Below, piece by piece: positions 1 through 59,030 of a DNA stretch of 64,000 nt. Made by a program: the position numbers and the translations under genes. Position 1 is the stretch's first letter. Every line of letters starts with the position of its first letter. A model generated the notes under the pieces. It saw only the letters and a program-made list of their open reading frames with translations. It had not been told where the DNA came from and ran no database searches. The DNA is from Octopus sinensis (taxonomy: Eukaryota): NCBI RefSeq assembly GCF_006345805.1, contig NC_043003.1, positions 3,100,001-3,164,000 on the forward strand, read 5' to 3'.

Positions 1-2686
1 TCCTTCACTGAGCCACTGACGAAGCTCCAACAAATTCTGGGAAACATGGCAAGTCCAATGCCAGACATTATCCTCCTTGGTGACTTCAACTTCCCTAACA
101 TCATCTGGCCACATGGACACATACTAAAACTGGGGACAAAAGCTGAACAAATACAGGCAGCCAAACTGTTGGAAGTCACAGAGAAATTATACCTCAAACA
201 AATGATGACAGAAGCAACAAGAAATAATAATACGATCGACTTGGTTTTCACCAACAACGAGGACACGCTATTTGACCTTCACTCAACCCCAACAATCCTT
301 TCAGACCACAATATTATTGAAATGCATTTACACATTGGTAATGAGCCCAATGCCACAACTCTTAAACAAAAGGACATGCCAAAGCTATGCAGGTATGATT
401 ATCACCAGGCAAATTGGGAAACTATTAACAACCAGTTACAAATCATTGACTGGGATCTCTACCTTACTGGGCCAGATAAACACAAGAAATTCTTAAACAA
501 GATCGAAGAAATATGTGAAAAAAATGTTCCTCTAAAGAAAACCAAGTCCACAAAAAAACCTGTACCACGGGAGCGAAAGATCCTGATGCGCAAAAGGTCA
601 AGACTAAGAAACAAAACATCTAAGCTGACATCAAAACATGAATTACAGAAAGTCCTTGACCAAATATACAGATTAGAAGACAATCTAAAACAACACTATG
701 ATGAAGAACGTAACAATGCAGAAAAGAAAGCCATAGAAAACATCAAGAAAAATCCAAAATGTTTCTACAGTTTTGCAAAGAAATACTCGAACACCAAGTC
801 AACAATAGGACCTCTCCAGAGACAAAATGGGGATGTAGTGAATAACCTTATTGAAATGGCAGAAATGTTGGGTCAACAGTATGAAAGTGTCTTCAGTGAG
901 CCATCTAAAACCATGAAGATCCATGACCCAGGAAAATTCTTCAAGGATATCGACCATACTAAACCTACCCTATCCGACATTGATTTCAACCCAGAAGACA
1001 TAGCAAGAGCAATAGACAAGCTCTCCATGCACTCGGCTGCGGGGCCTGACGGTTTCAATGCCATGATACTTAAAAACTGCAAGGCACAATTGTCGAAACC
1101 CCTTTACATGATATGGAGGGAATCTATGGAGAATGGCAAAATACCAAATACATATAAAGAAGCACACATAACTCCAATACATAAAGGGGATAGCAAATCA
1201 AAACCAAAGAACTACCGACCAATCTCACTGACATCACACATTATCAAGGTCTTCGAAAGAATAGTTCGTGGAAAACTGGTTGAGTTCCTGGAATCCAACA
1301 ATCTGATGAATTGCAACCAGCATGGATTCAGGTTAGGTAGATCATGCCTTTCCCAACTACTGGCACACCATGACCAAATCCTAGAAAATCTAGAGAATGG
1401 ATACAACACAGATGTTATCTACCTCGACTTTGCCAAGGCATTTGACAAGGTAGATCATGGCATCCTGGGTCACAAACTTCGAAAGCTAGGAGTAGGAGGA
1501 AAAGTTGGTACATGGATACACGAGTTCCTTACAAATAGAACTCAAACAGTCACTGTGAATGGAACCCATTCAACACCATCACCTGTGACCAGCAGTGTTC
1601 CTCAGGGTACAGTACTCGGCCCAATCCTGTTTCTCATCCTCATCTCTGACATAGATGAAGATACAACCAGCAACGTCTCATCCTTTGCTGATGACACCAG
1701 GGTCATGAGACAAATCAAAGACGAGGTGGATACAGAGGCCTTACAAAAGGACCTGACCACCATATATAAATGGCAGGAAACAAACAACATGTTGTTCAAT
1801 GATAAGAAGTTTGAACTAATTCGCTACGGAACAGATCAAGATCTGAAAAATACAACAAACTACAGAAACCCATCAGGACAACAAATAATGGAAAAACAGT
1901 ATGTGAAAGATTTAGGCATCCACATGGGAACCAGCCTAAAATTCAGAGAACACCTTGACTCAGTCTGTCTTACTGCAAGAAAGTACAGCGGGTGGATCTT
2001 GCGCACCTTCAAATCAAGAGATACCTCAACAATGAAAACCCTCTGGAACAGTATGATACTTCCGAGGATTGACTACTGTTCTCAGTTGTGGTCACCAACA
2101 ACAAAGGGCCAACTATCTAAGATAGAATCGCTCCAAAGAAATTTTACCTCATACTTCTCAGAAACGAGGGACCTGGACTATTGGCAAAGACTCAAAACCT
2201 TGAGGATGTACTCAATAGAAAGAAGATTTGAGCGATACCGAATTATATACATTTGGAAAATGATAGAGCAGAAGGTGCCAAACTTTGGTATCAAAACCTA
2301 CCACTCACTGCGCCACGGAAGACGCTGCCAGCTGCCACCAATCAACAAAAAGGCTGGCCAGGCAGCAAAAACCCTGCGAGAATCAAGTCTGTTGGTTCGA
2401 GGAGCACAACTGTTCAACTCCATTCCGGTACATGTCAGAAATCTATCAGGATGCAGTGTGGAATCATTCAAATTGCAACTGGATAGATACTTAAGCACCA
2501 TTAGAGATGAACCCCATCTCCCAGGATATACACAACGAGCACAAACTGACTCAAACTCGCTCCTACACATGTCAAATTTAAGCAGAGAATACAACCTGGC
2601 AACCACACCAGACTCTGAGGGTGGAGTCTTCGACTTGGCCTGAGCATGGACTCAAACCCAAATGAAATGAAATGAAATGAAATGAA
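1..2686 (+). mobile_element. CR1-clade LINE, 5' end outside the window, with (AAATG)n tail
   Basis: The frame is open from base 1 to the stop at 2641-2643, followed by a ~16-nt 3' UTR and (AAATG)5 at 2660-2686. Confidence 0.9.
46..2643 (+). CDS. LINE ORF2: APE endonuclease C-terminal part plus reverse transcriptase
   Basis: APE motifs GDFN, IDLVF, SDHN; RT motifs AAGPDG, KNYRPISLTS, QHGFR, DFAKAFDKV, SVPQGTVLGP, FADDT, KDLG; CR1-type C-terminus (ERYRIIYIWKM...LFNSIP). No stops or frameshifts. Confidence 0.92.
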   Translation: MASPMPDIILLGDFNFPNIIWPHGHILKLGTKAEQIQAAKLLEVTEKLYLKQMMTEATRNNNTIDLVFTNNEDTLFDLHSTPTILSDHNIIEMHLHIGNEPNATTLKQKDMPKLCRYDYHQANWETINNQLQIIDWDLYLTGPDKHKKFLNKIEEICEKNVPLKKTKSTKKPVPRERKILMRKRSRLRNKTSKLTSKHELQKVLDQIYRLEDNLKQHYDEERNNAEKKAIENIKKNPKCFYSFAKKYSNTKSTIGPLQRQNGDVVNNLIEMAEMLGQQYESVFSEPSKTMKIHDPGKFFKDIDHTKPTLSDIDFNPEDIARAIDKLSMHSAAGPDGFNAMILKNCKAQLSKPLYMIWRESMENGKIPNTYKEAHITPIHKGDSKSKPKNYRPISLTSHIIKVFERIVRGKLVEFLESNNLMNCNQHGFRLGRSCLSQLLAHHDQILENLENGYNTDVIYLDFAKAFDKVDHGILGHKLRKLGVGGKVGTWIHEFLTNRTQTVTVNGTHSTPSPVTSSVPQGTVLGPILFLILISDIDEDTTSNVSSFADDTRVMRQIKDEVDTEALQKDLTTIYKWQETNNMLFNDKKFELIRYGTDQDLKNTTNYRNPSGQQIMEKQYVKDLGIHMGTSLKFREHLDSVCLTARKYSGWILRTFKSRDTSTMKTLWNSMILPRIDYCSQLWSPTTKGQLSKIESLQRNFTSYFSETRDLDYWQRLKTLRMYSIERRFERYRIIYIWKMIEQKVPNFGIKTYHSLRHGRRCQLPPINKKAGQAAKTLRESSLLVRGAQLFNSIPVHVRNLSGCSVESFKLQLDRYLSTIRDEPHLPGYTQRAQTDSNSLLHMSNLSREYNLATTPDSEGGVFDLA

Positions 2687-6058: not shown

Positions 6059-6102
<44 letters not shown>

Positions 6103-6104
<2 letters not shown>

Positions 6105-7160
6105 GGCACATAACAAACACCATCCGATCGTGGCCGTTCGCCAGCCTCATCTGGCACCTGTGTCAGTGGCACATAAAAACACCATCCGAAGACCCGGCAA
6201 GACTAGTCAGGCCATAACCCGTGGCCCCTACCTGGGACGTAGTCAGTCCACCTGTGCATACCTTCCTTCTTGTGACACTTGTGAAGACCTGTTGAGGCAA
6301 GTGAAAATCAAATCAAATCAAATCAAATCAAAATAGATGAACATCAATGGAATTTGTATCTTTGCGGTACCAGTGCCGGTGGCACACAAGAAAACCATCC
6401 GAACGTGGCCGTAGCCAGTACCGCATCGACTGGCCTCCGTGCTGTGGGCACGTAACAAACACCATCCGATCGTGGCCGTTCGCCAGCCTCATCTGGCACC
6501 TGTGTCAGTGGCACATAAAAACACCATCCGAAGACCCGGCAAGACTAGTCAGGCCATAACCCGTGGCCCCTACCTGGGACGTAGTCAGTCCACCTGTGCA
6601 TACCTTCCTTCTTGTGACACTTGTGAAGACCTGTTGAGGCAAGTGAAAATCAAAATCAAATCAAAACAAATCAAAATAGATGAACATCAATGGAATTTGT
6701 ATCTTTGTGGTACCAGTGCCGGTGGCACACAAGAAAATCATCCGAACGTGGCCGTAGCCAGTACCGCATAGACTGGCCTCCGTGCTTTGGGGACGTGACA
6801 AACACCATCCGATCGTGGCCGTCCGCCAGCCTCATCTGGCACCTGTGTCGGTGGCACATAAAAACACCATCCGAGCGTGGCCGTCTGCCAGCCTCGTCTG
6901 GCACCTGTGTCGGTGGCACATAAAAACACCATCCGAGCGTGGCCGTTCGCCAGCCTCGTCTGGCACCTGTGTCGGTGGCACATAAAATCACCCACTACAC
7001 TCTCGGAGTGGTTGGCGTTAGGAAGGGCATCCAGCTGTAGAAACACTGCCAGATCTGACTGGCCTGGTGCAGCCTTCAGGCTCCCCAGACCCCAGTTGAA
7101 CCGTCCAACCCATGCTAGCATGGAAAACGGACGCTAAATGATGATGATGATGATGATGAT
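6103..7160 (+). mobile_element. RTE 3' UTR concatemer (342-nt unit repeated) with (GAT)n tail, inserted in (TA)n
   Basis: Matches 47275-47910. The junction ccatccga|agacccggcaagactag occurs identically at 6190 and 6532. Confidence 0.85.
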
Positions 7161-8913: not shown

Positions 8914-10380
8914 TAAAAAGAAAATATCCAAATCTTATATGTCAGCTGGATAATGAAAATGTAAGAAATAAACAAAACAAACATTTAAAAATAAAACTAA
9001 AAGTCCACATTTAAAAAATATTAAATTTATTAAAATTTTTTTCCTTCCCACAAGTGTTCAGACTATCAGGTGTTTTTGTGTGGGGGGGGGACTCTCTTCA
9101 ATGGATTTCTCTAGAAATTCCCTAAGCTGTAACAATTCCCCAATCTAGATTTGTTTTGTGAACTCATTTGGTACCAATCATATATTTTACTGTTGTCTTA
9201 GGCATGTTCTTCAAACCCAAATGCTTGGATGAAATAAGAAAAGCTGGGATAGAAGAAGGGTGACACAGCTGCCCATTGGAAGAACAGATCCTAGAACATA
9301 AGTGGTGAATGGATAGGCCAAACTTTAAGGAAATCAGCATCCTACATTACATGTTAGGCCCTGACTGGATCCCACAAGGAAGGTTGGCAAGAGCTAAAAA
9401 TAGTTGAAAGCAGAACTGAAAAAGCAGGGATCCAACTGAAGAGAAGCAGGAAAGACATCCCAGAGTGAAGGACAACGGAGAAAAGTCGTCAATGACCTAA
9501 GCTCCATTGTGACTGATCCTGTTTGTAGGGTACAAACTTCTTGATTAAAGTTTAGTTATTTTACTAAATTGTTTGTTATTTTCAAATTTAATTGAAACTA
9601 AACCAGTGCCTCTCAACAGAACCATGGCAACAAAAGTGTTAAAAGCATTTGCTTGCATAACTTTTTACATATGAAAACTTAGGATCTGTTCCAAATAAGG
9701 AGACATTTATGCAAGATTGGACATGATCGACCAGGATAACTTTCTATTTATTTCATTCTTTCTCAAATCAAAATATGATATTACTACTTTTAGGATTAAC
9801 AACAAGGTCGATAATCTCTGAAGCAAAGTTATTTAGGTTTAATTCAGGATTGTTGTTCACTGCAATTTAATCAATGATGTCTTTATCTTTGAACATCATA
9901 ATGGATTTCCTACGGACATTGTTTGTTCTGTATTCTATTTCTTTTGTAATCTACCTTACATCAAAGCTCTCAAAATCTTTTTCATCTTCTCCACTAGGAA
10001 TTAAATCGTTAAACAAAACAATAGCTCAGAATGCTTCAATACTCTTCAAATCACCTGCAGGTTTGACATAAGATTGCGTGACAGCAACCCCAAAATGCAC
10101 ATCCTTGATTATAGATTGGGTCATAAAGTGGGGGACAGAAATTTGAATGTTGCTTATAGTTTCTCATCAGAGAGAAATGGTATTGGCTGGCAGATATAAC
10201 TAAATATATTTCCACAGTCTAAAACTCACTAAACTTTGGCCTTCAGGCTAAACTTGAGTAGACTTTTGTCTCTGATATAAAAAAAAGCAAACACAGACTC
10301 CTGAAGACTCTCAGATCAAACATCTTGAAGATAAAAACCATACCAAAATGTGTGTCTATCCATTTTTCTATCTACTACCT

Positions 10381-12104
<1,724 letters not shown>

Positions 12105-12540
12105 AAGCCTGCTGTGCTTACCTTGGATCATAGGGCGACCTGCTGTGCTTGAGGAGACCTATTGAGTCAAGTACATCAACATCTAAATAAAAATCAAATA
12201 GAAATTGTAGTTGTGATACCTGTACGGTGGCACTTAAAGAGCACCATCCGAGTGGGGCCGATGCTAGTACCTCCTTGACTGGCTTCCGTGCCGGCGGCAC
12301 GTAAAAAGAACCAACCAATCATTGTCGCTGCCAGCCTCCCATGGCACCTGTGCCAATGGCACAGAAAAAGCACCCACTACACTCACGGAGTGGTTGGCAT
12401 TAGGAAGGGCATCCAGCTGTAGAAACACTGCCAGATCAGATTGGAGCCTGGTGCAGCCTCTGGCTTCCCAGACCCTGGTCAAACCGTCCAACCCATGTTA
12501 GCATGGAAAACGGACATTAAATGATGATGATGATGATGCA
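12105..12540 (+). mobile_element. RTE 3' UTR fragment
   Basis: Family tail motifs and (GAT)n. Confidence 0.8.
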
Positions 12541-30379: not shown

Positions 30380-31130
30380 TCAAGGGGAATAAATTATTTA
30401 CATTTGACGGATATTTGTCCTGATCTTGTTTGCTAACACAACAAACAAGCTGATATACCCTTCGGCCTTCATCGGGTGTCTTGGGAAAACTTCGAACCTG
30501 GGTTCTCATTCCTAAGGTATTTTTCAATGTTATTATAATCATTCAGCTCACTGCCTGGAACCTTGGGGTTAGTAGCCTGCGCTCTTAACCACTACGCCAT
30601 ATGCCCATGAGCAATTATGGAGTGAATTTTTAGGGATTATAAATCTAATATTCTCCTATCCTTCCTTAATACCGGTTCCCATATGCTATTCATATCTGCA
30701 CTCGGTCTGCTTAGGAGGTTGTTGTGTCCAAGCATATGTGCTGCTTCTTTGAGTTTTCGTATTTTCCAGTGGTGTTCCCTGTCTATTATTTAAACTTCAT
30801 CCCACAGGGAGAGGTGGTCTCCATTTTTCCATACATGATCAGCTATACCCGATTTATCAATATCTCCCCATGTCACAGCTTTGCGATGTTCCTCTACCCT
30901 TATTTTGAGGGGACGGCATGTTTCGCCTTTGTATAACTTACCACAGATGCATGGGATGGAGTACACCCAGTTTTTGGTCATGTTCTCTTCTGTTGGTGGT
31001 TTTACTCTAAGGAGATATTTGCAAAGTGTCGTATTACTCTTGAATACTCTCCTGACATTCATATGGGCCGCAGATCTTTTGTATCTTTTCGGAGGGGCCT
31101 TGCACATTGGGTAGACAGACTGTAGACACT
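30380..31130 (-). mobile_element. Penelope-like element 3' remnant: GIY-YIG endonuclease plus pLTR with decayed hammerhead
   Basis: VYSIPCICGKLYKGETCRPLKIRVEEHRK...SGIADHVWKNGDH (30790-31107). Downstream on the minus strand: GACAC-CCGATGA-AGGC...CAGC (30435-30480). Confidence 0.85.
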
Positions 31131-37020: not shown

Positions 37021-37784
37021 GTGTGAGAAAGTGGTTAAGCAATGGTTAATTTAGATAAGATAAGATACACTTCACTCTCTATTTCGTATCTTATCTAAAT
37101 TAACTATTGCTTAACCATTTTCTCATTAGACTATTTTCCTTAATTATTGCATGGTAATCGCCATAAGCTTTAAGTTTATATAAATACCATTATTATTATT
37201 TACAGGATTATAAAACTCGACATGGCATAACAAAACCATTTGCACCAAAATACATATATATATATGACCGGCTTCTTTCAGTTTCCGTCTACCAAATCCA
37301 CTCACAAGGCTTTTGTCAGCCCGAGGCTATAGTAGAAGACACTTGCCCAAGGTGTCACGCAGTGGGACTGAACCTGGAACCATGTGGTTCGGAAGCAAGC
37401 TTCTTACCACGCAGCCACCCCTAGAACAAAAAGTCTGGTGCTCCACTTCTTTATGCATTACAAAACTTGCATAAATTTTCGTTCATTAGCAGATAATTAA
37501 TAATTACAAAATATATAAGGCATAGGCGTGGTTCTGTGCTGAAGAACTTGGTTCTCAATCATGTGGTTTCTAGTCCAGTACCACTGCAGGGCACCTTAGG
37601 TAGGTGTCTGGCACTATAGCCCAGGGCAAATCAGTGCCTTGTGAAGGAATTTGGCTGACAGAAACTGTGTGGAATCACAAACATCACATACATACATTAA
37701 ATAAATACATACATTACATAAATACATACATTACATAAATACATACATACATTACATAAATACATACATACATAGATACATTAT

Positions 37785-38290
37785 TATGGCTGCCCCCTCG
37801 TTATCAAGTATGGCCATTGCACGAAGTTTAACTGTTACTGGTGCTGTGATCGAATGTGACTTTTTAGCCCAGCTAAAGATCTACAATGTCTTGTACAGAA
37901 TTAGCAACTAAAACCTTTACCGGTAATAGCCGGCTGTAGTTGTAACTGGGCTTCATGTACCTTTGCATGTCGTTTAAGTCCTCCTGCTGAATTACACTCT
38001 CTTCCACATGCCTGACAGATATGATTAGTATGGTGTGTTACACCACCACCAGTGGCCAGGTTGTCACTCATCTGTCTCGTTTTATGACTACGAAGATGAC
38101 TCATGAGTCCAGCTTTACTGAGGCAGGGTCTTGCACAGACACTGCATGTCAGCATCATAGGAAGACCCTTCCCATCTGGAAGTGTAACAGCGATGCCCTT
38201 CCTGACATCCCTCCTTACTTTCTCATGTGCAACTCGAGATTTCTCAAAAGTGGCTGTCCCCTCATGCACAATCCTTCTCCACCTGCATAC
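37785..38290 (-). mobile_element. RTE-type LINE 3' end with three C2H2 zinc fingers
   Basis: WRRIVHEGTATFEKSR...CSVCARPCLSKAGLMSHLRSH...CQACGRECNSAGGLKRHAKVH...C*FCTRHCRSLAGLKSHIRSQH; tail GGCCATACTTGATAACGAGGGGCAGCC. Confidence 0.75.
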
Positions 38291-39421
38291 ATACATACAC
38301 AGACAGGAAAATTTGAACTCACGGACAGGCAAAATACCGCTAAGCATTTTGCCTGGTGTGCGACCGATGCTGCCAGCTCGCCACCTTAAAATGAGAGTTA
38401 ATAATGATGTTATACGTGAGTTCAATACCTCACGTTGAAAAGAGATCACAAATGAACTGTGTACAGTTTAAGATGATTTAGTCAATGAATTAGTTAACAA
38501 CAACAACGGTTATAGTTTCAAACCACTTTAATTGCAATATCTTGTGAACATCCTACACATATATCCATATCTATATATATATTTACACATACATATACAT
38601 TACACTAATTAATAATATATCTTACAATAATTAATACTACTAATATATATATATATTGTCAGAACAGAGACAATATGACAAGATTGGAAGTTGGTAAACA
38701 TTTTGGTGTGTGTGTGTGTGTACAAGCAAATCACCAAAACTGTTAGTCTTCTCATTTTATTATTCTGATTAAATCAGCAAATAAAATACGGATAGGAACT
38801 ACGTGGACAGAAAAAGAAATGAAAGTAACCAAGTGTAACATCAAGCAGGTTTTGATATTTAGCTTTCTTATCAACAGCTGCCACTGCCAAATATGAAGAA
38901 CTGGGACATGAAATTTCTGTTAAACATCCACTAAAAACTTGGAATCTAGACAAATAAACACCTGAATTTTCTATCCTACCCTAATCTTTTTCAAAATCGT
39001 TAAGTTGTGAAACTGGTTAAGTAACTGTAATTTATATTTTCTTAATGACTTCAAGTGCATTTTCAACTTCCTTTTGAACACACACACATCTTTTGTGTGT
39101 GTTTATGTGTGTGTGTGGTTGTGTGTCTATGTGTGTCTCTGTGTGTGTGCGTGTATATGTATGTATACATATAATAAATTTATTGTACTACAAATATGTT
39201 ACAAATTTATTATATATGTACGTATACATATATGTATACATACATATATTTTTATATATGTAAATATGCGTGTGTGTGAGTGTATATATATATATATATA
39301 CACACTTACATACATGTATATATCCATATATATATATATATATATACATGCACTCACTTTTGTGCCCCCCACCCACAGATATATAAATTTATTGTACTAC
39401 AAATATGTTACAAATTTATTA

Positions 39422-42981: not shown

Positions 42982-43575
42982 CACACACGATGGGCTTCTT
43001 TCAGTGTTCGCCTACTAAATCCACTGACAAGGCTTTGGTTGGCCTGAGGCTAGAGTAGAAGATACTTTCCCAAAATTCCACGCAGTGGGACTGAACCTGG
43101 AACCATGTGGTTGGTGAGCAAGGTACTTACCACACAGCCACTCCTGCTCCTACAAAATATTTATTTTGGTAATTGTTGTAGAAAATCTGGTTCCTATAAA
43201 TTCGATGGAAATAACAATTTCATTACGGTTCTTTTGTCTTTTGTTTGTTTTCATCATTGGACGGTGGCCAGGCTGGGGCACCACCTTGAGGGTTTAGTCA
43301 AACAAATTGATCCTATTACTTATTATTTTTAAAAGTCTAATACTTATTCGGTTGGTCTCGTTTGCTGAACATCTAAGTTACTGAGACAGACATAAAGAGA
43401 AACACACACACACATGCACACAACATATATATACGATGGGCTTCTTTCAGTTTCTGTCTACTCACAAGGCTTTGTGGTAAGCTTGGGGCTATAGTAGAAG
43501 ACACTTGCCCAAGGTGCCATACAGTGGGACTGAACCCGGATCCATGTGGTTGGGAAGCAACCACTCTTGCACCTA
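42745..43575 (-). mobile_element. Two SINE family A copies
   Basis: Reverse-complement matches at about 42745-43150 and 43225-43575. Confidence 0.75.
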
Positions 43576-43716: not shown

Positions 43717-46700
43717 CATTTGGATAGCTTGATCTGTTCTCCCTTCGTTTCTCTTCTCTAAACATGGCGACTACATGCATTGCATTTTTAAAGTTTATTT
43801 TCCTTCAGAGCCATCTTCGATGTTTATCCCATTCTCCTCCGAAAATATGCCCCCTCGTTTCCTACCGTATTTTTTTCATTATTTATCTATTTTCTTTCTC
43901 TACCGTATTTTTTATTATTTATCTATTTTCACTCATTCTCTCTCTGGCTTTCATTCAGTTTTTATCTAATTAATTATTTCTCCCCCTCAAATATAGTATT
44001 CAAACTAGTTGCTTCGATTTTGTCGCCCACCCTCCCACCCCCACCACCAATACCGGAAGTTTCTACCCAAATACCGGAAACTGCCCCCCCCCACTAGCAC
44101 CTATGAAGGGTTTATCTGAACATATAGCGCAAAAAATTGTGAAAAGTATGCAGGTTGTAGTCGAGAGTTTCCATATGAAATCTGCCAAATGCAAGCTTTC
44201 TTTTCAGGTACATGACACGGCTGTCCCTCGTCCCAGGGTCTCTGATGCCCACACCTCCCAAACCCTCAGAGTTGGCACGCTCAATGTTGGCACATTGAAA
44301 GGTAGGTCTGGAGAGATTGTAGAGCTGCTTGAACGGAGACGTGTGGATGTATGCTGTGTCCAGGAAGTAAGGTGGAGAGGAGGTTCTGCTAGGCTCCTCA
44401 CAGGCAAGGAACACAGGTACAAGATTTTCTGGGCAGGGAACACTGACGGAGTCGGGGGCGTGGGTATACTTCTTGCGGAGAAATGGGTAGATAAGGTAAT
44501 CGAGGTAGTCAGAGTAAGTGACAGAGTAATTAAAATTAGATTAGTTCTTCACCATAGGACAGCTACCATCATCTCAGCATATGCCCCTCAACCAGGGCTA
44601 CCGGAAGGACAAAAAGACCAATTCTATGACACCCTATTGTGGACTACCTCATTGACAAATGACAGTGACCTTCTCTTCGTGGCAGGTGATTTCAATGGAC
44701 ATGTTGGACGACATGTCGGGGGCTTCCATGGCGTCCATGGAGGCTACGGTTTTGGCTCTCGAAATGAGGAGGAAGGAACCAGCTGCTGGAGTTCTGCGAT
44801 GCAAATGACCTTATGGTCTGCAATACCCACTTCAGAAACCCACCTCTCACCTAGTCACCTACCGTTCTGGCAGACACACCAGCCAGATTGACTACATCCT
44901 TGCCAGAAAAAGGGAAAGAGGGCTGATTATAAATGCCAAAACTTCCCAGGCGAAGAATGTACTCCCCAACATAGATTAGTAGTTAGCGACTTCAGGATCA
45001 GAGCTAAATGGTTGCCCAGAAGAAGACCAGCTTGGAGGAGAAGGGTCTGGAAGCTTAAAGATCCTGCAAATGGACAGAGATTTAGAGACATACTACTCGA
45101 AGCCTCTGACGAAATAGAAGGGGATATAGCTTCACTTAATGTGGAAGACAACTGGAGATTCCTACGGGACAATCTGCTGACAGCCACTGACCAGATCTGT
45201 GGATGGAGCAAAGTACCATCTCGACCCAGAGTAACATGGTGGTGGAACACTGTGGTTGACAGGGCTATTAGACAAAAGAGACAGGCTTGGAAGGACTGGA
45301 AGAACGGTGGTAGCAGGGAATTGTATCAGACAGCCAAAAGGGAAGCTAGGAGACAGGTTTATTTAGCCAGAGGGGAAGCGGATAAGAAAAAATTTGCCAA
45401 TGTTCTGAGCCGTGAGGATGAAAGACTTGAGGTATTTCGTGTTGCAAGACAGTGTGTGAGAGAGAATCGTGATGTGGTAGGAGAGAAGTGTGTTCGCATG
45501 GATGATGGTTCACTTGCGCTAAATGAGGATGCAAAGAGAGAGGTTTGGAGATGCCACTATGAAAGGTTGCTGAATAAAGAAAATGAATGGGATAAAGAGA
45601 GTCTGCCGAATGTTGACCCAACAGAGGGACCAGCTATCCGAGTTGATAGTTCCGTGGTAGCTAAGGCAATTAGAAGCATGAAGACAGGGAAAGCCCCAGG
45701 CCCATCAGGAATTACTGCAGAGATGCTCAAAATATCTGGCAGTGTCGGCTATAACCTAGTCACCCGTATAGTCAACCAGGTGATACACGAAGGAGTCATA
45801 CCCAATGACTGGTGTAGCAGCATACTAGTCAACTGCTACAAAGGTAAAGGTGATGCCCTGGATACAAATAATTACAGAGGTATCAAGCTGTTGGATCAGG
45901 TAATGAAGGTTACGGAGAGGGTCATAGCCCAACTAATTAGAGAGAGAGTTAGTTTAGATGAGATGCAGTTTGGGTTTGTCCCAGGGAAAAGCACCACTGA
46001 TGCTATATTCCTGGTAAGGCAGCTGCAGGAGAAATACATAGCCAAAGATAAGCCCCTGTACTGGCTTTCGTTGACATGGAGAAAGCCTTTGATAGGGTCC
46101 CCCGATCCCTCATCTGGTGGTCAATGAGGAAACTAGGGATAGATGAATGGCTGGTGAGGGCTGTGCAAGCCATGTACAGAGATGCCGTAAGTAAGGTTAG
46201 AGTTGGCAGCATGTACACAGAAGAATTCAAGGTAGAGGTTGGGGTCCACCAGGGTTCAGTACTCAGCCCCCTCCTATTTATCATAGTCCTCCAGGCAATT
46301 GTGGAGGAATTCAAGACAGGTTGCCCCTGGGAGCTCCTCTATGCTGACGATCTCGCTCTAATCGCTGAGTCACTATCAGAACTGGAGGAGAAGTTCCAGG
46401 TGTGGAAGGAGGGTTTAGAATCGAGGGGCCTTAGAGTCAACCTAGCTAAAACTAAAGTACTAATAAGTAGAAAGTTAGAAAATCCACAAATATCCTCAGG
46501 AAGATGGCCCTGCTCGATCTGTAGAAAAGGTGTAGGTAGAAACTCTATAAGATGTACCCAGTGTAAGCTATGGACACATAAGAGGTGCAGCAATGTCAAA
46601 GGTAGGCTAACTGGGAAGATAGTTTTTGTATGTGGCAGATGCTCTGGAGCATTGACCTCCGAAAATCTGCAGAAAACAACTTCCGTCACTTTCCGGGGGG

Positions 46701-47910
46701 AAAAACTAGAAGTAGTTGATAGCTTCCGCTATCTAGGTGACCAAGTCAGTAGTGGGGGCGGGTGCGCTGAAAGTGTAACTGCTAGAATAAGAATAGCCTG
46801 GGCAAAGTTTAGGGAGCTCTTACCTCTGCTGGTGACTAAAGGCCTCTCGCTCAGAGTAAAAGGCAGACTGTATGATGCATGTGTACGAACAGCTATGCTA
46901 CATGGCAGTGAAACATGGGCCGTGACTGCTGAGGACATGCGTAAGCTCGTGAGGAACGAAGCCAGTATGCTCCGATGGATGTGTAATGTCAGTGTACTTA
47001 CTCGACAGAGCGTTAGTACCTTGAGAGAAATGTTGTACCTAAGAAGCATCAGTTGTTGTGTGCAAGAGAGACGATTGCGCTGGTATGGTCATGTGGCGAG
47101 AATGGATGAAGATAGGTGTGTGAGAAAGTGCCAATCCCTAGCAGTTGAGGGAACCCGAGGAAGAGGTAGACCCAGGAAAACCTGGGACGAAGTGGTGAAG
47201 CACGACCTTCGGACGTTAGGTCTCACCATGGAAATGACTAGAGACCGAGACCTATGGAAGTATGCTGTGCGTGAGAAGACCCGGCAAGACTAGTGAAGCC
47301 ATAATCCGTGGCCCCTACCTGGGATGTAGTCAGTCCACCTGTGCATACCTTCCTTCTTGTGACACTTGTGAAGACCTGTTGAGGCAAGTGAGAATCGAAT
47401 CAAATCAAATCAAATCGAACCAAATCAAAATAGATGAACATCAATGGAATTTGTATCCTTGTGGTACCAGTGCCGGTGGCACATAAGAAAACCATCCGAA
47501 CGTGATCGTAGCCAGTACCACAACGACTGGCCATGTGCTGAAGGCACGTAACAAACACCATCCGAGCATGGCCGTCCGCCAGCCCCGTCTGGCACCTGTG
47601 TCGGTGACACATAAGAAAACACCATCCGAGCGTGGCCGTCAGCCAGCCTCGTCTGGCACCTGTGTCGGTGGCACATAAAAAACACCATCCGAGCGTGGCC
47701 GTCTGCCAGCCTCGTCTGGCACCTGTGTCGGTGGCACATAAAATCACCCACTACACTCTCGGAGTGGTTGGCGTTAGGAAGGGCATCCAGCTGTAGAAAC
47801 ACTGCCAGATCTGACTGGCCTGGTGCAGCCTTCGGGCTTGCCAGACCCCAGTTGAACCGTCCAACCCATGCTAGCATGGAAAGCGGACGTTAAACGATGA
47901 TGATGATGAT
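43717..47910 (+). mobile_element. Near-full-length RTE-clade LINE (~4.2 kb) with long repeat-containing 3' UTR and (GAT)n tail, flanked by (TA)n
   Basis: Pyrimidine-rich 5' region, single long ORF in pieces, 3' UTR 47294-47910. Confidence 0.92.
44103..47293 (+). pseudogene. RTE ORF (APE endonuclease, RT, internal PHD finger) with four single-base frameshifts
   Basis: APE: GTLNVGTL, VQEVRW, AYAPQ, GDFNGH, QIDYIL. RT: KAPGPSG, NYRGIKL, QFGF, DMEKAFD, GVHQGSVLSP, YADD, FRYLG. Single-base losses near 44782, 44837, 44942 and 46061. Confidence 0.9.
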
Positions 47911-51689: not shown

Positions 51690-52755
51690 GGTCGTTGCTA
51701 TTCGAGCGAGGTCATTGCCAGTACCACCTGACTGGGCCCCATGCCGGTGGCACATAAAAAGCACCCACGACACTCTCAGAGTGGTTGGCATTAGGAAGGG
51801 CATCCAGCTGTAGAAGCTCTGCCAAATCAAGATTGGAGCCTGGTGCAGCCATCTGGTTCGCCAGCCCTCAGTCAAAATCGCCCAACCCATGCTAGCATGG
51901 AAAGCGGACGTTAAACGATGATGATGATGATGTTGTTGATGTACAGTACAACTTTGGAACTTTGGAGTACCGGAATAAGCAGATGTACTTCGTGAGAGCA
52001 CAGCCTGGATTAGAACTCTATCTACATAATATGTGCATACATACATAGCTAGATCGCTAGCCACTACACATTCTTTATTTTCTCTCCTTGTTTCTTTCTG
52101 TGGAAGAGCATAGGCTCGAAACGTTAAAGACTTTTTCACTTCCCGAGCGTTAAACTAATACATCTGTTTGTTGTCTACACCACCTGTCTTTGTCTTTTGT
52201 TTTTTTTTTTGTTAATTTGCCCCCTGTATATATATGAATACATATGTAGATCAAATTGGAGCCTAGTGCAGCCATCTGGTTTTCCAGTCCTCAGTCAAAT
52301 CGTCCAACCCATGCTAGCATGGAAAGCGGATGTTAAACGATTATGATGATGATGATGATATATATATATATGTGTGTATGTATAATTGTTGTCATGGCTG
52401 ATGACAGTACCGCCTGATTGGCACCTATGCCACAGGAATGTTAAAAGCACCTTTTAAGTGTGATCGTTGCCAGGGCCATTGACTGGCTCCTGCGCTGGTG
52501 GCACATAAAAAGCACCATTCAAGTGTGATTGTTGCCAGCATCACCTGAATGGCTCCTGTACCGGTGGCACATAAAAAACACCATTCAAGTATGGTTGATG
52601 CCAGTACGCCTGACTGCTCTCATGCTGGTGGCACGCAAAAGTACCCACTGGACTCTTGGAGTGGTTGGCGTTAGGAAGGGCATCCAGCTCAGTCAAACCG
52701 TCCAACCCATGCCAGCACGGGAAGCGGTCATTAAACGACAATGATGATGATGATG
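51690..52755 (+). mobile_element. Three RTE 3' tail fragments with an intervening Penelope-type pLTR piece
   Basis: Family tails at about 51690-51935, 52250-52360 and 52395-52755. Confidence 0.75.
52094..52129 (+). ncRNA. Minimal type I hammerhead with variant core CUGUGGA
   Basis: CTTT-CTGTGGA-A-GAGC-atag-GCTC-GAAA-CG-T-T-AAAG; stem III is the palindrome ACGT. Confidence 0.6.
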
Positions 52756-52757
52756 GT

Positions 52758-53142
52758 TTGCTCTTTTACTTGTTTCAGTCATTTGACTGAGGCCAAGCTG
52801 GAGTACCGCCTTTTAGTCAAAGAAATTGACCCCAGGACTTACTCTTTGCAAGCTTGGTACTTATTCTACTGGCTCTTTTCCCGAACCAGCATCAGTTGTC
52901 AAGCAAAGGTGGGCGGACAAACACAGACACAAATAAATATACACATACATACATATATACATACACACACACATACATATATATATATGACAGGCTTCTT
53001 TCAGTTTCTGTCTAGCAAATGCACTCACAAGGCTTTGGTCAGCCTGTGTAGAAGACACTTGCCCAAGTTGCCACGCAGCGAGACTGAACCCGGAATCATG
53101 TGGTTGGTAAGCAAGCTTCTTACCACACAGCCACTCCTGCAC
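52758..53142 (-). mobile_element. SINE family A
   Basis: Reverse-complement match to the family. Confidence 0.8.
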
Positions 53143-53173
53143 CTATATATATATATATATATATATATATAAT

Positions 53174-53213
53174 GGGGATGTAGCTCAGTGGTAGAGCGTT
53201 CGCTTTGCATGTG
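53174..53213 (+). pseudogene. 5' half of tRNA-Ala(UGC), truncated 3' of the anticodon and fused to an RTE tail
   Basis: GGGGATG-TA-GCTC-AGTGGTA-GAGC-G-TTCGC-TTTGCAT-GTG; anticodon TGC at 53206-53208; no T arm. Confidence 0.85.
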
Positions 53214-53403
53214 GCACCTGTGCTGGTGGCACGTAAAAAGCACCCACTACACTCGTGGAGTGGTTGGCGTTACGAAGGGCATCCAGCTGTAGAAACACTG
53301 CCAGACCAGACTGGAGCCTGGTGCAGCCCCAGGCTTCCCAGACCCCGGTCAAACCGTCCAACCCGTGCTAGCGCGGAAAACAGACATTAAACGATGATGA
53401 TGA
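53212..53403 (+). mobile_element. RTE 3' tail joined to the tRNA half
   Basis: TGGCACCTGTGCTGGTGGCACGTAAAAAGCACCCACTACAC...(GAT)n then (AT)n. Confidence 0.85.
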
Positions 53404-53716
53404 TATATATATAGATTACACACACACACATGTAAACATCATGCACATACACACATATAGATATGCACATTCATATTTTGATTCTATAATTAAGCTTCTT
53501 TTTTCTGCAGGATCCTACATTGTAAGGATATATTTTCTGTTAATATTTTTCTATGCAGCCTTATTTTATGGTGTACAGTGTTGTGTATCAAAATTGTTTT
53601 TGTCATAAATGCATGTTTTGTCTCATACGACAGAGTGTTGTGCTCGTCTGGCAAATTTAACAGAAGTGTCTTGTTTGTAACTTCCATTTTTGCAATCCAT
53701 TTATGGATTAAATCTG

Positions 53717-54132
53717 CAGGAGTGGCTGTGTGGTAAGTAGCTTGCTAACCAACCACATGGTTCCGGGTTCAGTCCCACTGCGTGGCATCTTGGGCAAGTG
53801 TCTTCTGCTATAGCCCCGGGCCGACCAATGCCTTGTGAGTGGATTTGGTAGACGGAAACTGAAAGAAGCCTGTCGTATATATGTATATATATATATATAT
53901 AAGTGTGTGTGTGTATATGTTTGTGTGTCTGTGTTTGTCCCCCTAGCATTGCTTGACAACCGATGCTGGTGTGTTTACGTCCCCGCCGCTTAGCGGTTCG
54001 GCAAAAGAGACCGATAGAATAAGTACTGGGCTTACAAAGAATAAGTCCCGGGGTCGATTTGCTCGACTAAAGGCGGTGCTCCAGCATGGCCGCAGTCAAA
54101 TGACTGAAACAAGTAAAAGAGTAAAGAGAGTA
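53717..54132 (+). mobile_element. SINE family A, full-length young copy (tRNA-like head, CORE-like CTTGGGCAAG segment)
   Basis: GGAGTGGCTGTGTGGTAAG..GGTTCAGTCCC head, core, TA/TG spacer and 3' GAAACAAGTAAAAGAGTAAAG tail. Confidence 0.85.
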
Positions 54133-57584: not shown

Positions 57585-59030
57585 CTATGCATTGTCAAAA
57601 ACAGGCTGCTCCATGCCTTCTATAACTCTGGTGTTGGTATCACACCTAGCCTGGGGACTTGGTATGGCCACACCATCACTGTTAGGCATCTTTGCAGACT
57701 CAGCATGAACCATTGTGTCAGGTGTGGTATTCAATTCTGGTTCTGGTTCACGTGTGTTCAGTGGGGCCATCTGCTCAACCATCCCTACCTGCAGTGGGTG
57801 ACCTTCCTGAATCCATGGAGTATTCTTTCCGGCATGTATCACATATTTTGCCTTGGATGCGACTTTTTCGAGCGTGTGTATTACATTCTCACCTATTTCA
57901 AAGAATGGGTTTACAGCAATCCTCAATGGTCTTTGCATTAACTTTTTGCCCGGTGATAATTTACAACCACCCGAAGCACTCCAATGGTTAAACAATATTT
58001 TTTTCAAGTAGTTGCTGAAATTCCCTGTCTTTGGATCAAAATGCTTCAGTGCAGCTTTCACAGTTTGTATGGCCCTCTCATTGGTGCCGTTAGATGCCAA
58101 ACTGTAAACGGGTGTCTCAATTTTTCTGCGACTCATTGATGACAACATGTTCTTTAACGCAACAAATTCAAGCCCATTGTCTGATACTAAAGCTGTATGG
58201 GCAAAGACCTCATTTTACCACCTTTTTGCCACCTCAGTTGAGCGATTAGGACACAAGAATGCCTCAATCCATGTTGAATAGGCATCTACAATTACAAGTA
58301 TGTTACCAATGTTTGGAACATATGCCCAATCCATATGCACACATTCCCAGGGCCCAGAAATAGGTTATGAATCATTTTCCTTAACTAAATTTGGCCTAAC
58401 TCTCTGCTAACTATTGCAAGATCTGACAAACCTCTCCACTGAGTAAGCCTACCCAGGCCACCAAACACAGAATCATGCCTTCGTAATTGCTTGTTGAATG
58501 CCTATGTGTGCAGCTCTATAAAGTGCTGGAATAAACCGATGGTTTCTATGATATATTAAACCATTTTGTGATGTTAGAAAATCCTTCCCTTCATTCGAGA
58601 CCGATCTCTGATTTTGCAGTAAATTTCTTTCCTTTATTTTGTTACATAATGCATTTGCATTTAGTTATTTTCGGATACCTTCCATCATTACGGGATCGAT
58701 GTCCTGCCACGCACTGTCATATTTATCTAAATGCGAAGCAAAAACAATTATATCACCATTGTTATTCTCATCATACCTCAATCGAGAGAGGACCTGAATG
58801 AGCGGAATACTTTTATCCAGAACATGCTTAAATTCTACTGTGACAGGATCCAACTCCACCTGGCTATTTTTTGTGAAGCAGATCGAGATACATTTAATTC
58901 CTTCACGAATAGGGTTTTCAAAGACTGTTGATCTGTTTCCAGATAAAACTGCTTTCCTAGAAGGAAATTCCGCGGTCTGTCCTCGCACCATACCACTGCA
59001 TAAGCCTCTCTCTCTATGTTCGACCAATTT
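57585..59030 (-). mobile_element. Decayed Ty3/Gypsy pol remnant (RNase H end plus integrase)
   Basis: ...IQVLSRLRY; AHIGIQQ...VWWPG...VRSCNS; PWECVHMDWA; LVIVDAYSTWIEA; VSDNG; SNGTNERAIQTVK; multiple stops. Confidence 0.85.

What the first reader, a model, noticed from the sequence alone, without database searches (positions are those of the whole stretch)
53174..53403. tRNA-Ala(UGC) 5' half fused to an RTE 3' tail: a proto-SINE or template-switch chimera
Seen: 40 nt of tRNA starting exactly at mature position 1 and ending just past the anticodon loop, joined through a TG microhomology to the RTE tail, (GAT)n, with (TA)n on both flanks. Known: LINE RTs form U6-L1-type chimeras by template switching; SINEs are often tRNA head plus LINE tail; 5' tRNA halves arise by anticodon-region cleavage. 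Inference: a snapshot of SINE birth. It has an A box but no B box, so it is probably a dead end unless other copies exist.
Basis: partly seen in the sequence, partly recalled or inferred. Interest (0 to 1): 0.7.

Follow-up and report, generated by a model that had tools for sequence, protein, structure and literature searches.

The report
tRNA-Ala half fused to RTE tail
In an octopus-type genome, one of about twenty copies of an RTE jumping-gene tail carries the first ~40 bases of alanine tRNA on its front end; it was most likely made and inserted in one reverse-transcription event, a known kind of accident and the proposed first step in SINE birth.

Summary
Window 53174-53211 is a clean tRNA-Ala(UGC) 5' part: position 1 through the anticodon loop plus one to four bases. 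It has an A box and no B box. From 53212 it runs straight into the last ~190 nt of an RTE-type LINE 3' end, finishing in (GAT)4. The whole unit sits inside a (TA)n tract.

The tail is real and abundant, with about 20 copies in the window, one ending a near-full-length endonuclease/RT element. No other copy here carries a tRNA head, and neither do the tails in 20.9 kb of Octopus vulgaris. No tRNA 3' half exists anywhere in the window.

My best reading is a chimeric retrocopy made in one RTE insertion event. Reverse transcription started on the RTE tail and continued onto tRNA-Ala, or onto a 5' fragment of it, at a TG(G) overlap. RNA ligation before reverse transcription gives the same product.

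I could not test whether this is a single event or one copy of a multi-copy SINE-like family. No cephalopod genome was searchable beyond 85 kb.

tRNA-half/LINE-1 chimeras and RTE-plus-small-RNA SINE birth are already published, so this is a new example of a known kind. Interest is moderate.

The parts
53144..53171 (.). (TA)14 microsatellite, upstream flank and presumed target site
   Evidence: TRF; sequence
53172..53173 (+). AT, two bases between the (TA)n tract and tRNA position 1. They could be filler, an out-of-phase target remnant or leader bases; this is unresolved.
53174..53211 (+). tRNA-Ala(UGC) positions 1-39: acceptor 5' strand, D arm, anticodon stem 5' strand, anticodon loop and G39
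   Evidence: 25/25 identity with a human tRNA-Ala 5' fragment; loop plus GT as in human tRNA-Ala-TGC
53181..53191 (+). Pol III A box TAGCTCAGTGG. No B box follows.
   Evidence: motif scan
53206..53208 (+). anticodon TGC inside the 7-nt loop at 53204-53210
53212..53214 (+). TGG, bases that could belong to both the tRNA (T40, G41, possibly G42) and the RTE (TGGCACC): the possible microhomology at the junction
   Evidence: Sequence. RTE copies read ...C|TGGCACC. Stem pairing is inferred, and human tRNA-Ala-TGC has G39 T40.
53212..53392 (+). 5'-truncated RTE-type LINE 3' end: the start of the last 62-66-bp 3'UTR repeat unit plus the unique tail
   Evidence: BLAST against the window; alignment; the same tail ends the near-full-length element at 44103-47906, which has Exo_endo_phos and RVT_1 domains
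53363..53376 (+). 3' hairpin CCGTGCTAGCGCGG. It is invariant as CCATGC(T/C)AGCATGG in 14 of 15 other tails (the 15th has a T at the fifth base of the left arm); here three substitutions all keep the pairing.
   Evidence: fold_alignment
53393..53404 (+). (GAT)4 terminal microsatellite of the RTE tail
53404..53415 (.). (TA)6 downstream flank, continuing the upstream (TA)n; a possible target-site duplication that cannot be delimited

Best explanation
This is a chimeric retrocopy that entered a (TA)n microsatellite as one unit in a single RTE-driven, target-primed reverse transcription event.

Proposed sequence of events:
1. The RTE reverse transcriptase started, as usual, on the (GAT)n/3' hairpin end of an RTE RNA and copied about 190 nt.
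2. At the start of the last 3'UTR repeat unit (TGGCACC...) it left that template. It continued on tRNA-Ala(UGC), or on a 5' fragment of it ending just past the anticodon loop, helped by a 2-3 nt overlap, TG(G).
3. It ran to the tRNA's 5' end, and the cDNA was joined to the target.

The product is neither a tRNA gene nor, most likely, an active SINE: it has an A box, no B box and no tRNA 3' half. I take it to be a single or very low-copy event.

Shown: the anatomy, the identity of both parts, the flanks, and the absence of other copies in 85 kb. Inferred: the single event, the template switch, and the low copy number.
For: - The tRNA part starts at +1, is in sense orientation and abuts the RTE tail with no intervening sequence.
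- The RTE tail is the authentic 3' end of an endonuclease/RT LINE.
- Both flanks are the same (TA)n. Six to eight of the 11 RTE tails printed are followed directly by (TA)n, so this is the usual RTE insertion context.
- 5' truncation at varied points is the rule for the other 19 tails in the window and L072. Only this one has a small-RNA sequence at its 5' edge.
- No B box or tRNA 3' half occurs anywhere in the 64-kb window, and no other small RNA reaches the Rfam gathering score. This argues against a disrupted resident tRNA gene.
- The junction and the tRNA 25-mer are unique in the window, and the head is absent from the tails seen in 20.9 kb of O. vulgaris.
- Precedent: tRNA-half/LINE-1 chimeras with target-site duplications are reported in primates (bioRxiv 10.1101/2025.02.02.635956). 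Template switching that adds a small-RNA head to an RTE derivative is proposed as SINE birth (Kojima 2018, PMC5786205).
Against: - Copy number in the genome was not measurable. A random 64-kb window is a priori more likely to hold a member of a family of 10^4-10^5 copies than a rare one-off event.
- The tail carries three pairing-preserving, CpG-creating substitutions in a hairpin that is almost invariant in 15 other tails. It therefore came from a replicating lineage not sampled here, and that lineage could be a SINE lineage.
- The target-site duplication cannot be delimited in a microsatellite.
- The break lies in the anticodon stem, not the loop.
- Reverse transcription through tRNA positions 37, 26 and 9 is normally hindered by base modifications (established knowledge).
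- Published tRNA/L1 chimeras are mostly antisense, unlike this one.
Confidence: 0.45

Rival explanations
1. It is one copy of a multi-copy SINE-like, non-autonomous family mobilised by RTE. The head would be a truncated tRNA-Ala(UGC). Alternatively, it is a full tRNA-Ala-headed SINE that lost the segment between tRNA position ~41 and the last RTE repeat unit in this copy.
For: - The architecture, a tRNA head plus a ~190-nt RTE tail ending in a short tandem repeat, is exactly that of known RTE-partnered SINEs (PMC3747384; PMC5786205).
- Octopus genomes are ~11.6% SINE, with hundreds of unclassified families (PMC13282606).
- The tail has lineage-specific compensatory changes in the otherwise nearly invariant 3' hairpin, as expected for a tail evolving apart from the sampled RTEs.
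- Base-rate argument: abundant families are what a random window usually shows (inference).
Against: - The element has no B box, so no standard type-2 Pol III promoter.
- No second copy was found in the window or in L072. This only excludes families far above ~10^5 copies.
- The octopus SINEs described in the papers read are tRNA-Core/tRNA-Deu types (PMC8967140). The SINE heads seen in the window are not Ala-like.
Confidence: 0.3
2. The chimera existed as RNA before reverse transcription. A 5' tRNA-Ala fragment with a 2',3'-cyclic phosphate end was ligated by the tRNA ligase RtcB to a 5'-OH fragment of RTE 3' RNA, and the RTE machinery then retrotransposed the fused RNA.
For: - It yields the same product: sense orientation, one insertion event and a precise 5' end.
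- RtcB ligation has been shown to precede retrotransposition of U6/L1 chimeras (PMC6789731, abstract; cited as a model).
- tRNA fragments made by anticodon nucleases carry the required end chemistry, and RtcB is the tRNA ligase (established knowledge).
Against: - The fragment would have to end at positions 39-41, in the stem rather than in the loop where such nucleases usually cut.
- Ligation needs no microhomology, yet a TG(G) overlap is possibly present.
- No data on octopus tRNA fragments were available.
Confidence: 0.15
3. It is not an RNA-level chimera. Either a 5'-truncated RTE inserted into or next to a resident tRNA-Ala gene whose 3' half was later deleted, or the junction is an assembly error in a repeat-rich, microsatellite-rich region.
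For: - RTE tails are very dense here, with three more within 1.5 kb upstream.
- Microsatellites flank the element, and such regions are prone to rearrangement and misassembly (inference).
Against: - No tRNA 3' half or B box occurs anywhere in the window.
- The sequence after (GAT)4 is the same (TA)n that precedes tRNA +1. A DNA-level origin would therefore need several exact coincidences.
- The tRNA part starts exactly at +1 after the microsatellite.
Confidence: 0.07

Closest known systems
tRNA-half/LINE-1 and U6/LINE-1 chimeric insertions of mammals (bioRxiv 10.1101/2025.02.02.635956; PMC6789731; PMC4476161)
   Same: A small Pol III RNA, or about half of a tRNA (positions 1-37 in that study), is fused to a 5'-truncated LINE 3' end and inserted as one unit by target-primed reverse transcription.
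   Different: - The LINE here is RTE-type, with a specific 3' tail and (GAT)n rather than poly(A).
- The host is a cephalopod.
- The tRNA part is in sense orientation, whereas most tRNA/L1 chimeras are antisense and attributed to twin priming.
- The break is 1-4 nt beyond the loop.
RTE-partnered tRNA-derived SINEs, such as tobacco TS, Bov-tA, AfroSINEs and SINE2-1_EC (PMC3747384; Malik and Eickbush 1998 as cited there)
   Same: A tRNA-derived 5' head joined to ~100-200 nt of the partner RTE's 3' end, finishing in a short tandem repeat.
   Different: Those SINEs keep both the A and B boxes and exist in thousands of copies. Here the B box is absent and only one copy is known.
Template-switch model of SINE birth from RTE derivatives (Kojima 2018, PMC5786205; Okada and Ohshima 1993 as cited)
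   Same: A small-RNA head is added to an RTE-derived RNA by a template switch during reverse transcription.
   Different: The model concerns bipartite (5'+3') RTE derivatives and complete promoter-bearing heads. This element has only the 3' part and a half head.
Genuine tRNA-Ala(UGC) gene
   Same: Positions 1-39 are canonical, and the first 25 nt are identical to a human tRNA-Ala fragment.
   Different: It has no variable loop, T arm or acceptor 3' strand. It falls below the Rfam threshold and ARAGORN does not call it.

Membership tests
LINE-mediated small-RNA chimeric retrocopy (U6/L1 type) | Small-RNA sequence fused directly to a 5'-truncated LINE 3' end | tested here: met
   The tRNA part at 53174-53211 abuts the RTE tail from 53212, with no spacer.
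LINE-mediated small-RNA chimeric retrocopy (U6/L1 type) | One pair of target-site duplications flanking the whole chimera, showing a single insertion | tested here: inconclusive
   Both flanks are (TA)n. This is compatible with a duplication, but one cannot be delimited inside a microsatellite.
LINE-mediated small-RNA chimeric retrocopy (U6/L1 type) | Empty orthologous or allelic site lacking both parts | not testable with these tools
   No cephalopod genome collection could be searched by DNA. The exact-protein look-ups failed.
LINE-mediated small-RNA chimeric retrocopy (U6/L1 type) | Small RNA begins at its mature 5' end | tested here: met
   G1 at 53174 aligns to tRNA model position 1.
tRNA-derived SINE (SINE2) with RTE partner | Internal Pol III promoter with both A and B boxes | tested here: not met
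   The A box is at 53181-53191. No match to GGTTCRANNCC or GTTCNANNC lies within 53174-53403.
tRNA-derived SINE (SINE2) with RTE partner | 3' tail shared with a partner LINE | tested here: met
   The tail is 83-91% identical to most full-length tail copies (range 75-91%), including the tail of the element at 44103-47906.
tRNA-derived SINE (SINE2) with RTE partner | Many dispersed copies with the same head-tail junction | tested here: inconclusive
   One copy in the 64-kb window and none in 20.9 kb of O. vulgaris. The metagenome and prokaryote-genome hits to the junction are all chance matches. The sample is far too small to decide.
Functional tRNA gene | Complete cloverleaf reaching the family threshold | tested here: not met
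   Rfam tRNA scores 18.1 bits against a gathering score of 29. ARAGORN finds nothing at default settings.
RTE clade of non-LTR retrotransposons (for the tail donor) | Single ORF with an APE-type endonuclease and RT; 3' end in a short tandem repeat rather than poly(A) | tested here: met
   Exo_endo_phos and RVT_1 lie on one strand at 44103-47293, now split by frameshifts, and the tail ends in (GAT)n. RTE elements with microsatellite 3' ends are reported in octopus (PMC9115989).
RTE clade of non-LTR retrotransposons (for the tail donor) | RT phylogeny places it with reference RTE elements | not tested
   No named reference LINE set was available. The best named relatives are unclassified Octopus bimaculoides and O. 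vulgaris RT proteins.

The most novel reading that the evidence does not exclude
The element belongs to an amplifying, so far undescribed octopus retroposon family whose head is only the 5' half of tRNA-Ala. That would be a 'half-tRNA' SINE that spreads without a B box, or that is regenerated repeatedly because 5' tRNA-Ala fragments are a preferred second template or ligation partner of the RTE machinery. The pairing-preserving changes in the tail's 3' hairpin would then mark the family's own evolving tail.
Probability: 0.2. Interest if true: 0.65.

Novelty: new member of a known kind. Interest (0 to 1): 0.4.

Why it matters
If it is a single event, it is a clean invertebrate, RTE-clade example of a process documented mainly for mammalian L1: a LINE reverse transcriptase or an RNA ligase joining a tRNA fragment to a LINE tail. 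It is in the sense orientation, the one needed to build a SINE. That gives concrete support to the template-switch model of SINE origin, in a lineage whose genome is unusually rich in SINEs and RTE elements.

If other copies exist, it would show that a half tRNA can head a mobile element, which would challenge the view that SINE heads must carry both Pol III boxes.

Either way, a genome-wide census of small-RNA::RTE junctions in Octopus assemblies is cheap. It would measure how often such raw material for new SINEs is produced.

Tried and rejected
- **Protein route to eukaryotic reads and assemblies.** I ran exact look-ups of ORFs spanning the junction (58 aa and 72 aa) and of two LINE ORFs; none is on record.
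- **Homology searches with junction-spanning frames.** The protein collection evidently does not hold octopus repeat ORFs of this kind.
- **Junction 17-mer in public collections.** It gave 37 hits in JGI metagenomes and 34 in GTDB genomes. Flank identity is random in every case, so all are chance matches. These collections probably contain no cephalopod DNA, so the negative result says nothing about copy number.
- **RTE tail core in IMG/VR.** There were 0 hits.
- **Resident tRNA gene split by an insertion.** Rejected, because no B box or 3' half exists anywhere in the window.
- **tRNA-like cloverleaf from the tRNA part plus RTE start.** The model closes the acceptor stem on CACCCAC with only 5 of 7 pairs, and the score is sub-threshold. 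The whole element folds no better than shuffles, z = -0.58.
- **B-box-like motif in the tail.** GGTCAAACC at 53346-53354 lacks one T of the consensus and lies ~155 nt from the A box, so I did not count it as a promoter.
- **A-to-I editing of the template.** Six of ~11 private differences are A>G or T>C. The numbers are too small to support this.
- **Literature.** I found no description of an octopus SINE with a tRNA-Ala head.

Full report
**What is there**

The window is a cephalopod-type genome, dense in (TA)n/(CA)n microsatellites and retroposons. The RT ORF of its main LINE is 85% identical to an Octopus bimaculoides protein and 80% identical to an O. vulgaris protein. A 20.9-kb O. vulgaris locus, L072, shares the same repeat families at 78-95% identity.

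At 53174-53211 the plus strand reads GGGGATGTAGCTCAGTGGTAGAGCGTTCGCTTTGCATG. The features of this stretch are:
- The first 25 nt are unique in the window even with 3 mismatches allowed, with 0 expected by chance.
- Those 25 nt are identical to a published human tRNA-Ala 5' fragment (PMC6237853).
- The D arm is GCTC/GAGC, and the anticodon stem 5' strand is TTCGC.
- The 7-nt loop is TTTGCAT, with anticodon TGC at 53206-53208.
- The Rfam tRNA model aligns these positions one to one with high posterior probability.

The element as a whole is not a tRNA. It scores 18.1 bits against a gathering score of 29, and ARAGORN finds nothing at default settings. The A box TAGCTCAGTGG is at 53181-53191. There is no B box in the element, and no strict B box anywhere in the 64 kb.

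**The tail**

From 53212 (TGGCACCTGTGCTGGTGGCACGTAAAAAGCACC...) to (GAT)4 at 53393-53404, the sequence matches about 20 other loci in the window at 75-91% identity (most full-length matches 83-91%). These loci are 3' ends of one LINE group:
- One copy ends a near-full-length element at 44103-47906. Its ORFs, now split in three, carry Exo_endo_phos, RVT_1 and a PHD-like finger.
- The 3'UTR contains 62-66-bp tandem repeats whose unit begins with TGGCACC.
- It is followed by a ~160-nt unique tail and (GAT)n.

This matches what is published for octopus RTE/RTE-BovB elements with microsatellite 3' ends (PMC9115989; PMC8967140). I did not run an RT phylogeny, so 'RTE' rests on architecture and the literature.

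In the other copies the base before TGGCACC belongs to the previous repeat unit (...CCTCGTC|TGG...). In this copy it is tRNA G39.

**The junction**

RTE homology starts at T53212. tRNA identity is certain to G39 (53211). By stem pairing with 27-TTCGC-31 it could continue through T40, G41 and possibly G42. Human tRNA-Ala-TGC also has G39 T40 after the same loop (PMC11185800). Either way, the break is 1-4 nt past the loop, inside the anticodon stem.

**Flanks and insertion**

Upstream lies (TA)14 at 53144-53171, followed by AT. Downstream of (GAT)4 lies (TA)6, followed by GATTA(CA)n. Joining the flanks gives one continuous (TA)n.

Six to eight of the 11 RTE tails printed are likewise followed directly by (TA)n, and several 5'-truncated copies abut (TA)n at their 5' edge. 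This is therefore the normal RTE insertion context, and the tRNA part lies inside the inserted unit. A target-site duplication cannot be delimited in a microsatellite.

**Other copies**

- The junction 17-mer and the tRNA 25-mer are unique in the window.
- None of the tails seen in L072 has the head.
- Of 20 tail-bearing loci examined, only this one has a recognisable small RNA at its 5' edge.
- No other small RNA reaches Rfam thresholds in the window.

Outside these 85 kb I could not test copy number:
- ORFs across the junction are not on record.
- Translated searches found no candidates.
- The junction hits in metagenomes and prokaryotic genomes are all chance matches, with random flanks.
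- IMG/VR lacks the tail entirely.

A family of 10^4 copies in a ~2.7-Gb genome would be expected only 0.3 times in 85 kb (my estimate). The negative result is therefore weak.

**An unexpected detail**

RNAalifold on 16 tails predicts a 3' structure with two stems: an inner hairpin (here 53363-53376) and an outer stem, CGTCC/GGACG.

The inner hairpin is invariant as CCATGC(T/C)AGCATGG in 14 of 15 other copies; the 15th (12454-12533) has a T at the fifth base of the left arm. In the chimera it reads CCGTGCTAGCGCGG. That is three substitutions, one A-U to G-C double change and one U-A to U-G, and all keep the pairing while creating CpGs.

In contrast, two G>A changes at CpGs break the outer stem, as expected for decay after insertion.

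The tail therefore seems to derive from a replicating lineage not represented among the sampled tails. That lineage could be another RTE subfamily or a SINE lineage. In total the tail has about 11 private differences in 192 nt, so the insertion is probably not very recent.

**Interpretation**

Most likely (confidence 0.45) this is a chimeric retrocopy from one RTE insertion event. cDNA synthesis began on an RTE 3' end, switched after ~190 nt to tRNA-Ala(UGC) or a 5' fragment of it at the TG(G) overlap, and ran to the tRNA 5' end.

The rivals are:
- **Multi-copy SINE-like family, or an internally deleted SINE copy (0.3).** This is favoured by base rates and by the distinct hairpin. It is disfavoured by the missing B box.
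- **Fusion at the RNA level by an RtcB-type ligase before reverse transcription (0.15).** This has been shown for U6/L1 (PMC6789731).
- **DNA-level coincidence or misassembly (0.07).** This is disfavoured by the absence of any tRNA 3' half and by the identical flanks.

**Comparison with what is known**

tRNA-half/LINE-1 chimeras were reported in 2025: 21 loci in primates, covering tRNA positions 1-37, and mostly antisense. RTE-partnered tRNA SINEs and the template-switch model of their birth are well established.

This element works like those chimeras. It has the layout of an RTE SINE, but it fails the SINE promoter criterion, and its copy number is unknown. It is a new member of a known kind. 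The sense orientation, the RTE clade and the cephalopod host are the new aspects.

Noticed in passing
window 53363-53376, and the matching hairpin in 15 other tails (e.g. 47866-47879; L072 11782-11795): A conserved 3' stem-loop in the RTE tail. The inner 5-bp hairpin is identical in 14 of 15 copies, but the chimera carries three pairing-preserving, CpG-creating substitutions. The outer stem, CGTCC/GGACG, shows compensatory variants among copies. This is probably the RT recognition element.
   Followed up: partly
window 44103-47906 (+): A near-full-length RTE-type LINE. Endonuclease, RT and a PHD-like finger lie in three ORF pieces separated by frameshifts, followed by a 3'UTR with tandem repeats and a (GAT)n tail.
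   Followed up: partly
window 46-2643 (+): An uninterrupted 865-aa ORF with endonuclease (Exo_endo_phos_2) and RT domains, from a different LINE group. It may be a recently active copy.
   Followed up: no
window 52443-52604, 6100-6960, 47560-47716: RTE 3'UTRs contain 62-66-bp tandem repeats with variable copy number between insertions.
   Followed up: partly
window 53718-53875 (+), ~52990-53139 (-), 43427-43560 (-), 37250-37422 (-); L072 1144-1533: A tRNA-like SINE (GGAGTGGCTGTGTGGTAAG...GGTTCCGGGTTCAGTCC...CTTGGGCAAGTG...) ending in GAAACTGAAAGAAGCCTGTC plus (TA)n; this is not an RTE tail. One copy lies head-to-head with the chimera, separated only by the (TA)14.
   Followed up: partly
window ~30540-30610 (-): A second tRNA-like head with A box TGGCGTAGTGG (GGGCATATGGCGTAGTGGTTAAGAGCGCAGGCTACTAACCCCAAGGTTCCAGG). 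It is not joined to an RTE tail.
   Followed up: no
window 10325-12150: A microsatellite of about 1.8 kb, (TA)/(CA)/(TATG)-type, next to RTE tails. Six to eight of the 11 RTE tails printed are followed directly by (TA)n, suggesting that RTE targets or generates these tracts.
   Followed up: partly
window 37901-38449 (-) and 57585-58148 (-): ORFs that by eye resemble a C2H2 zinc finger and a retroelement integrase fragment. Neither was scanned against any family library.
   Followed up: no
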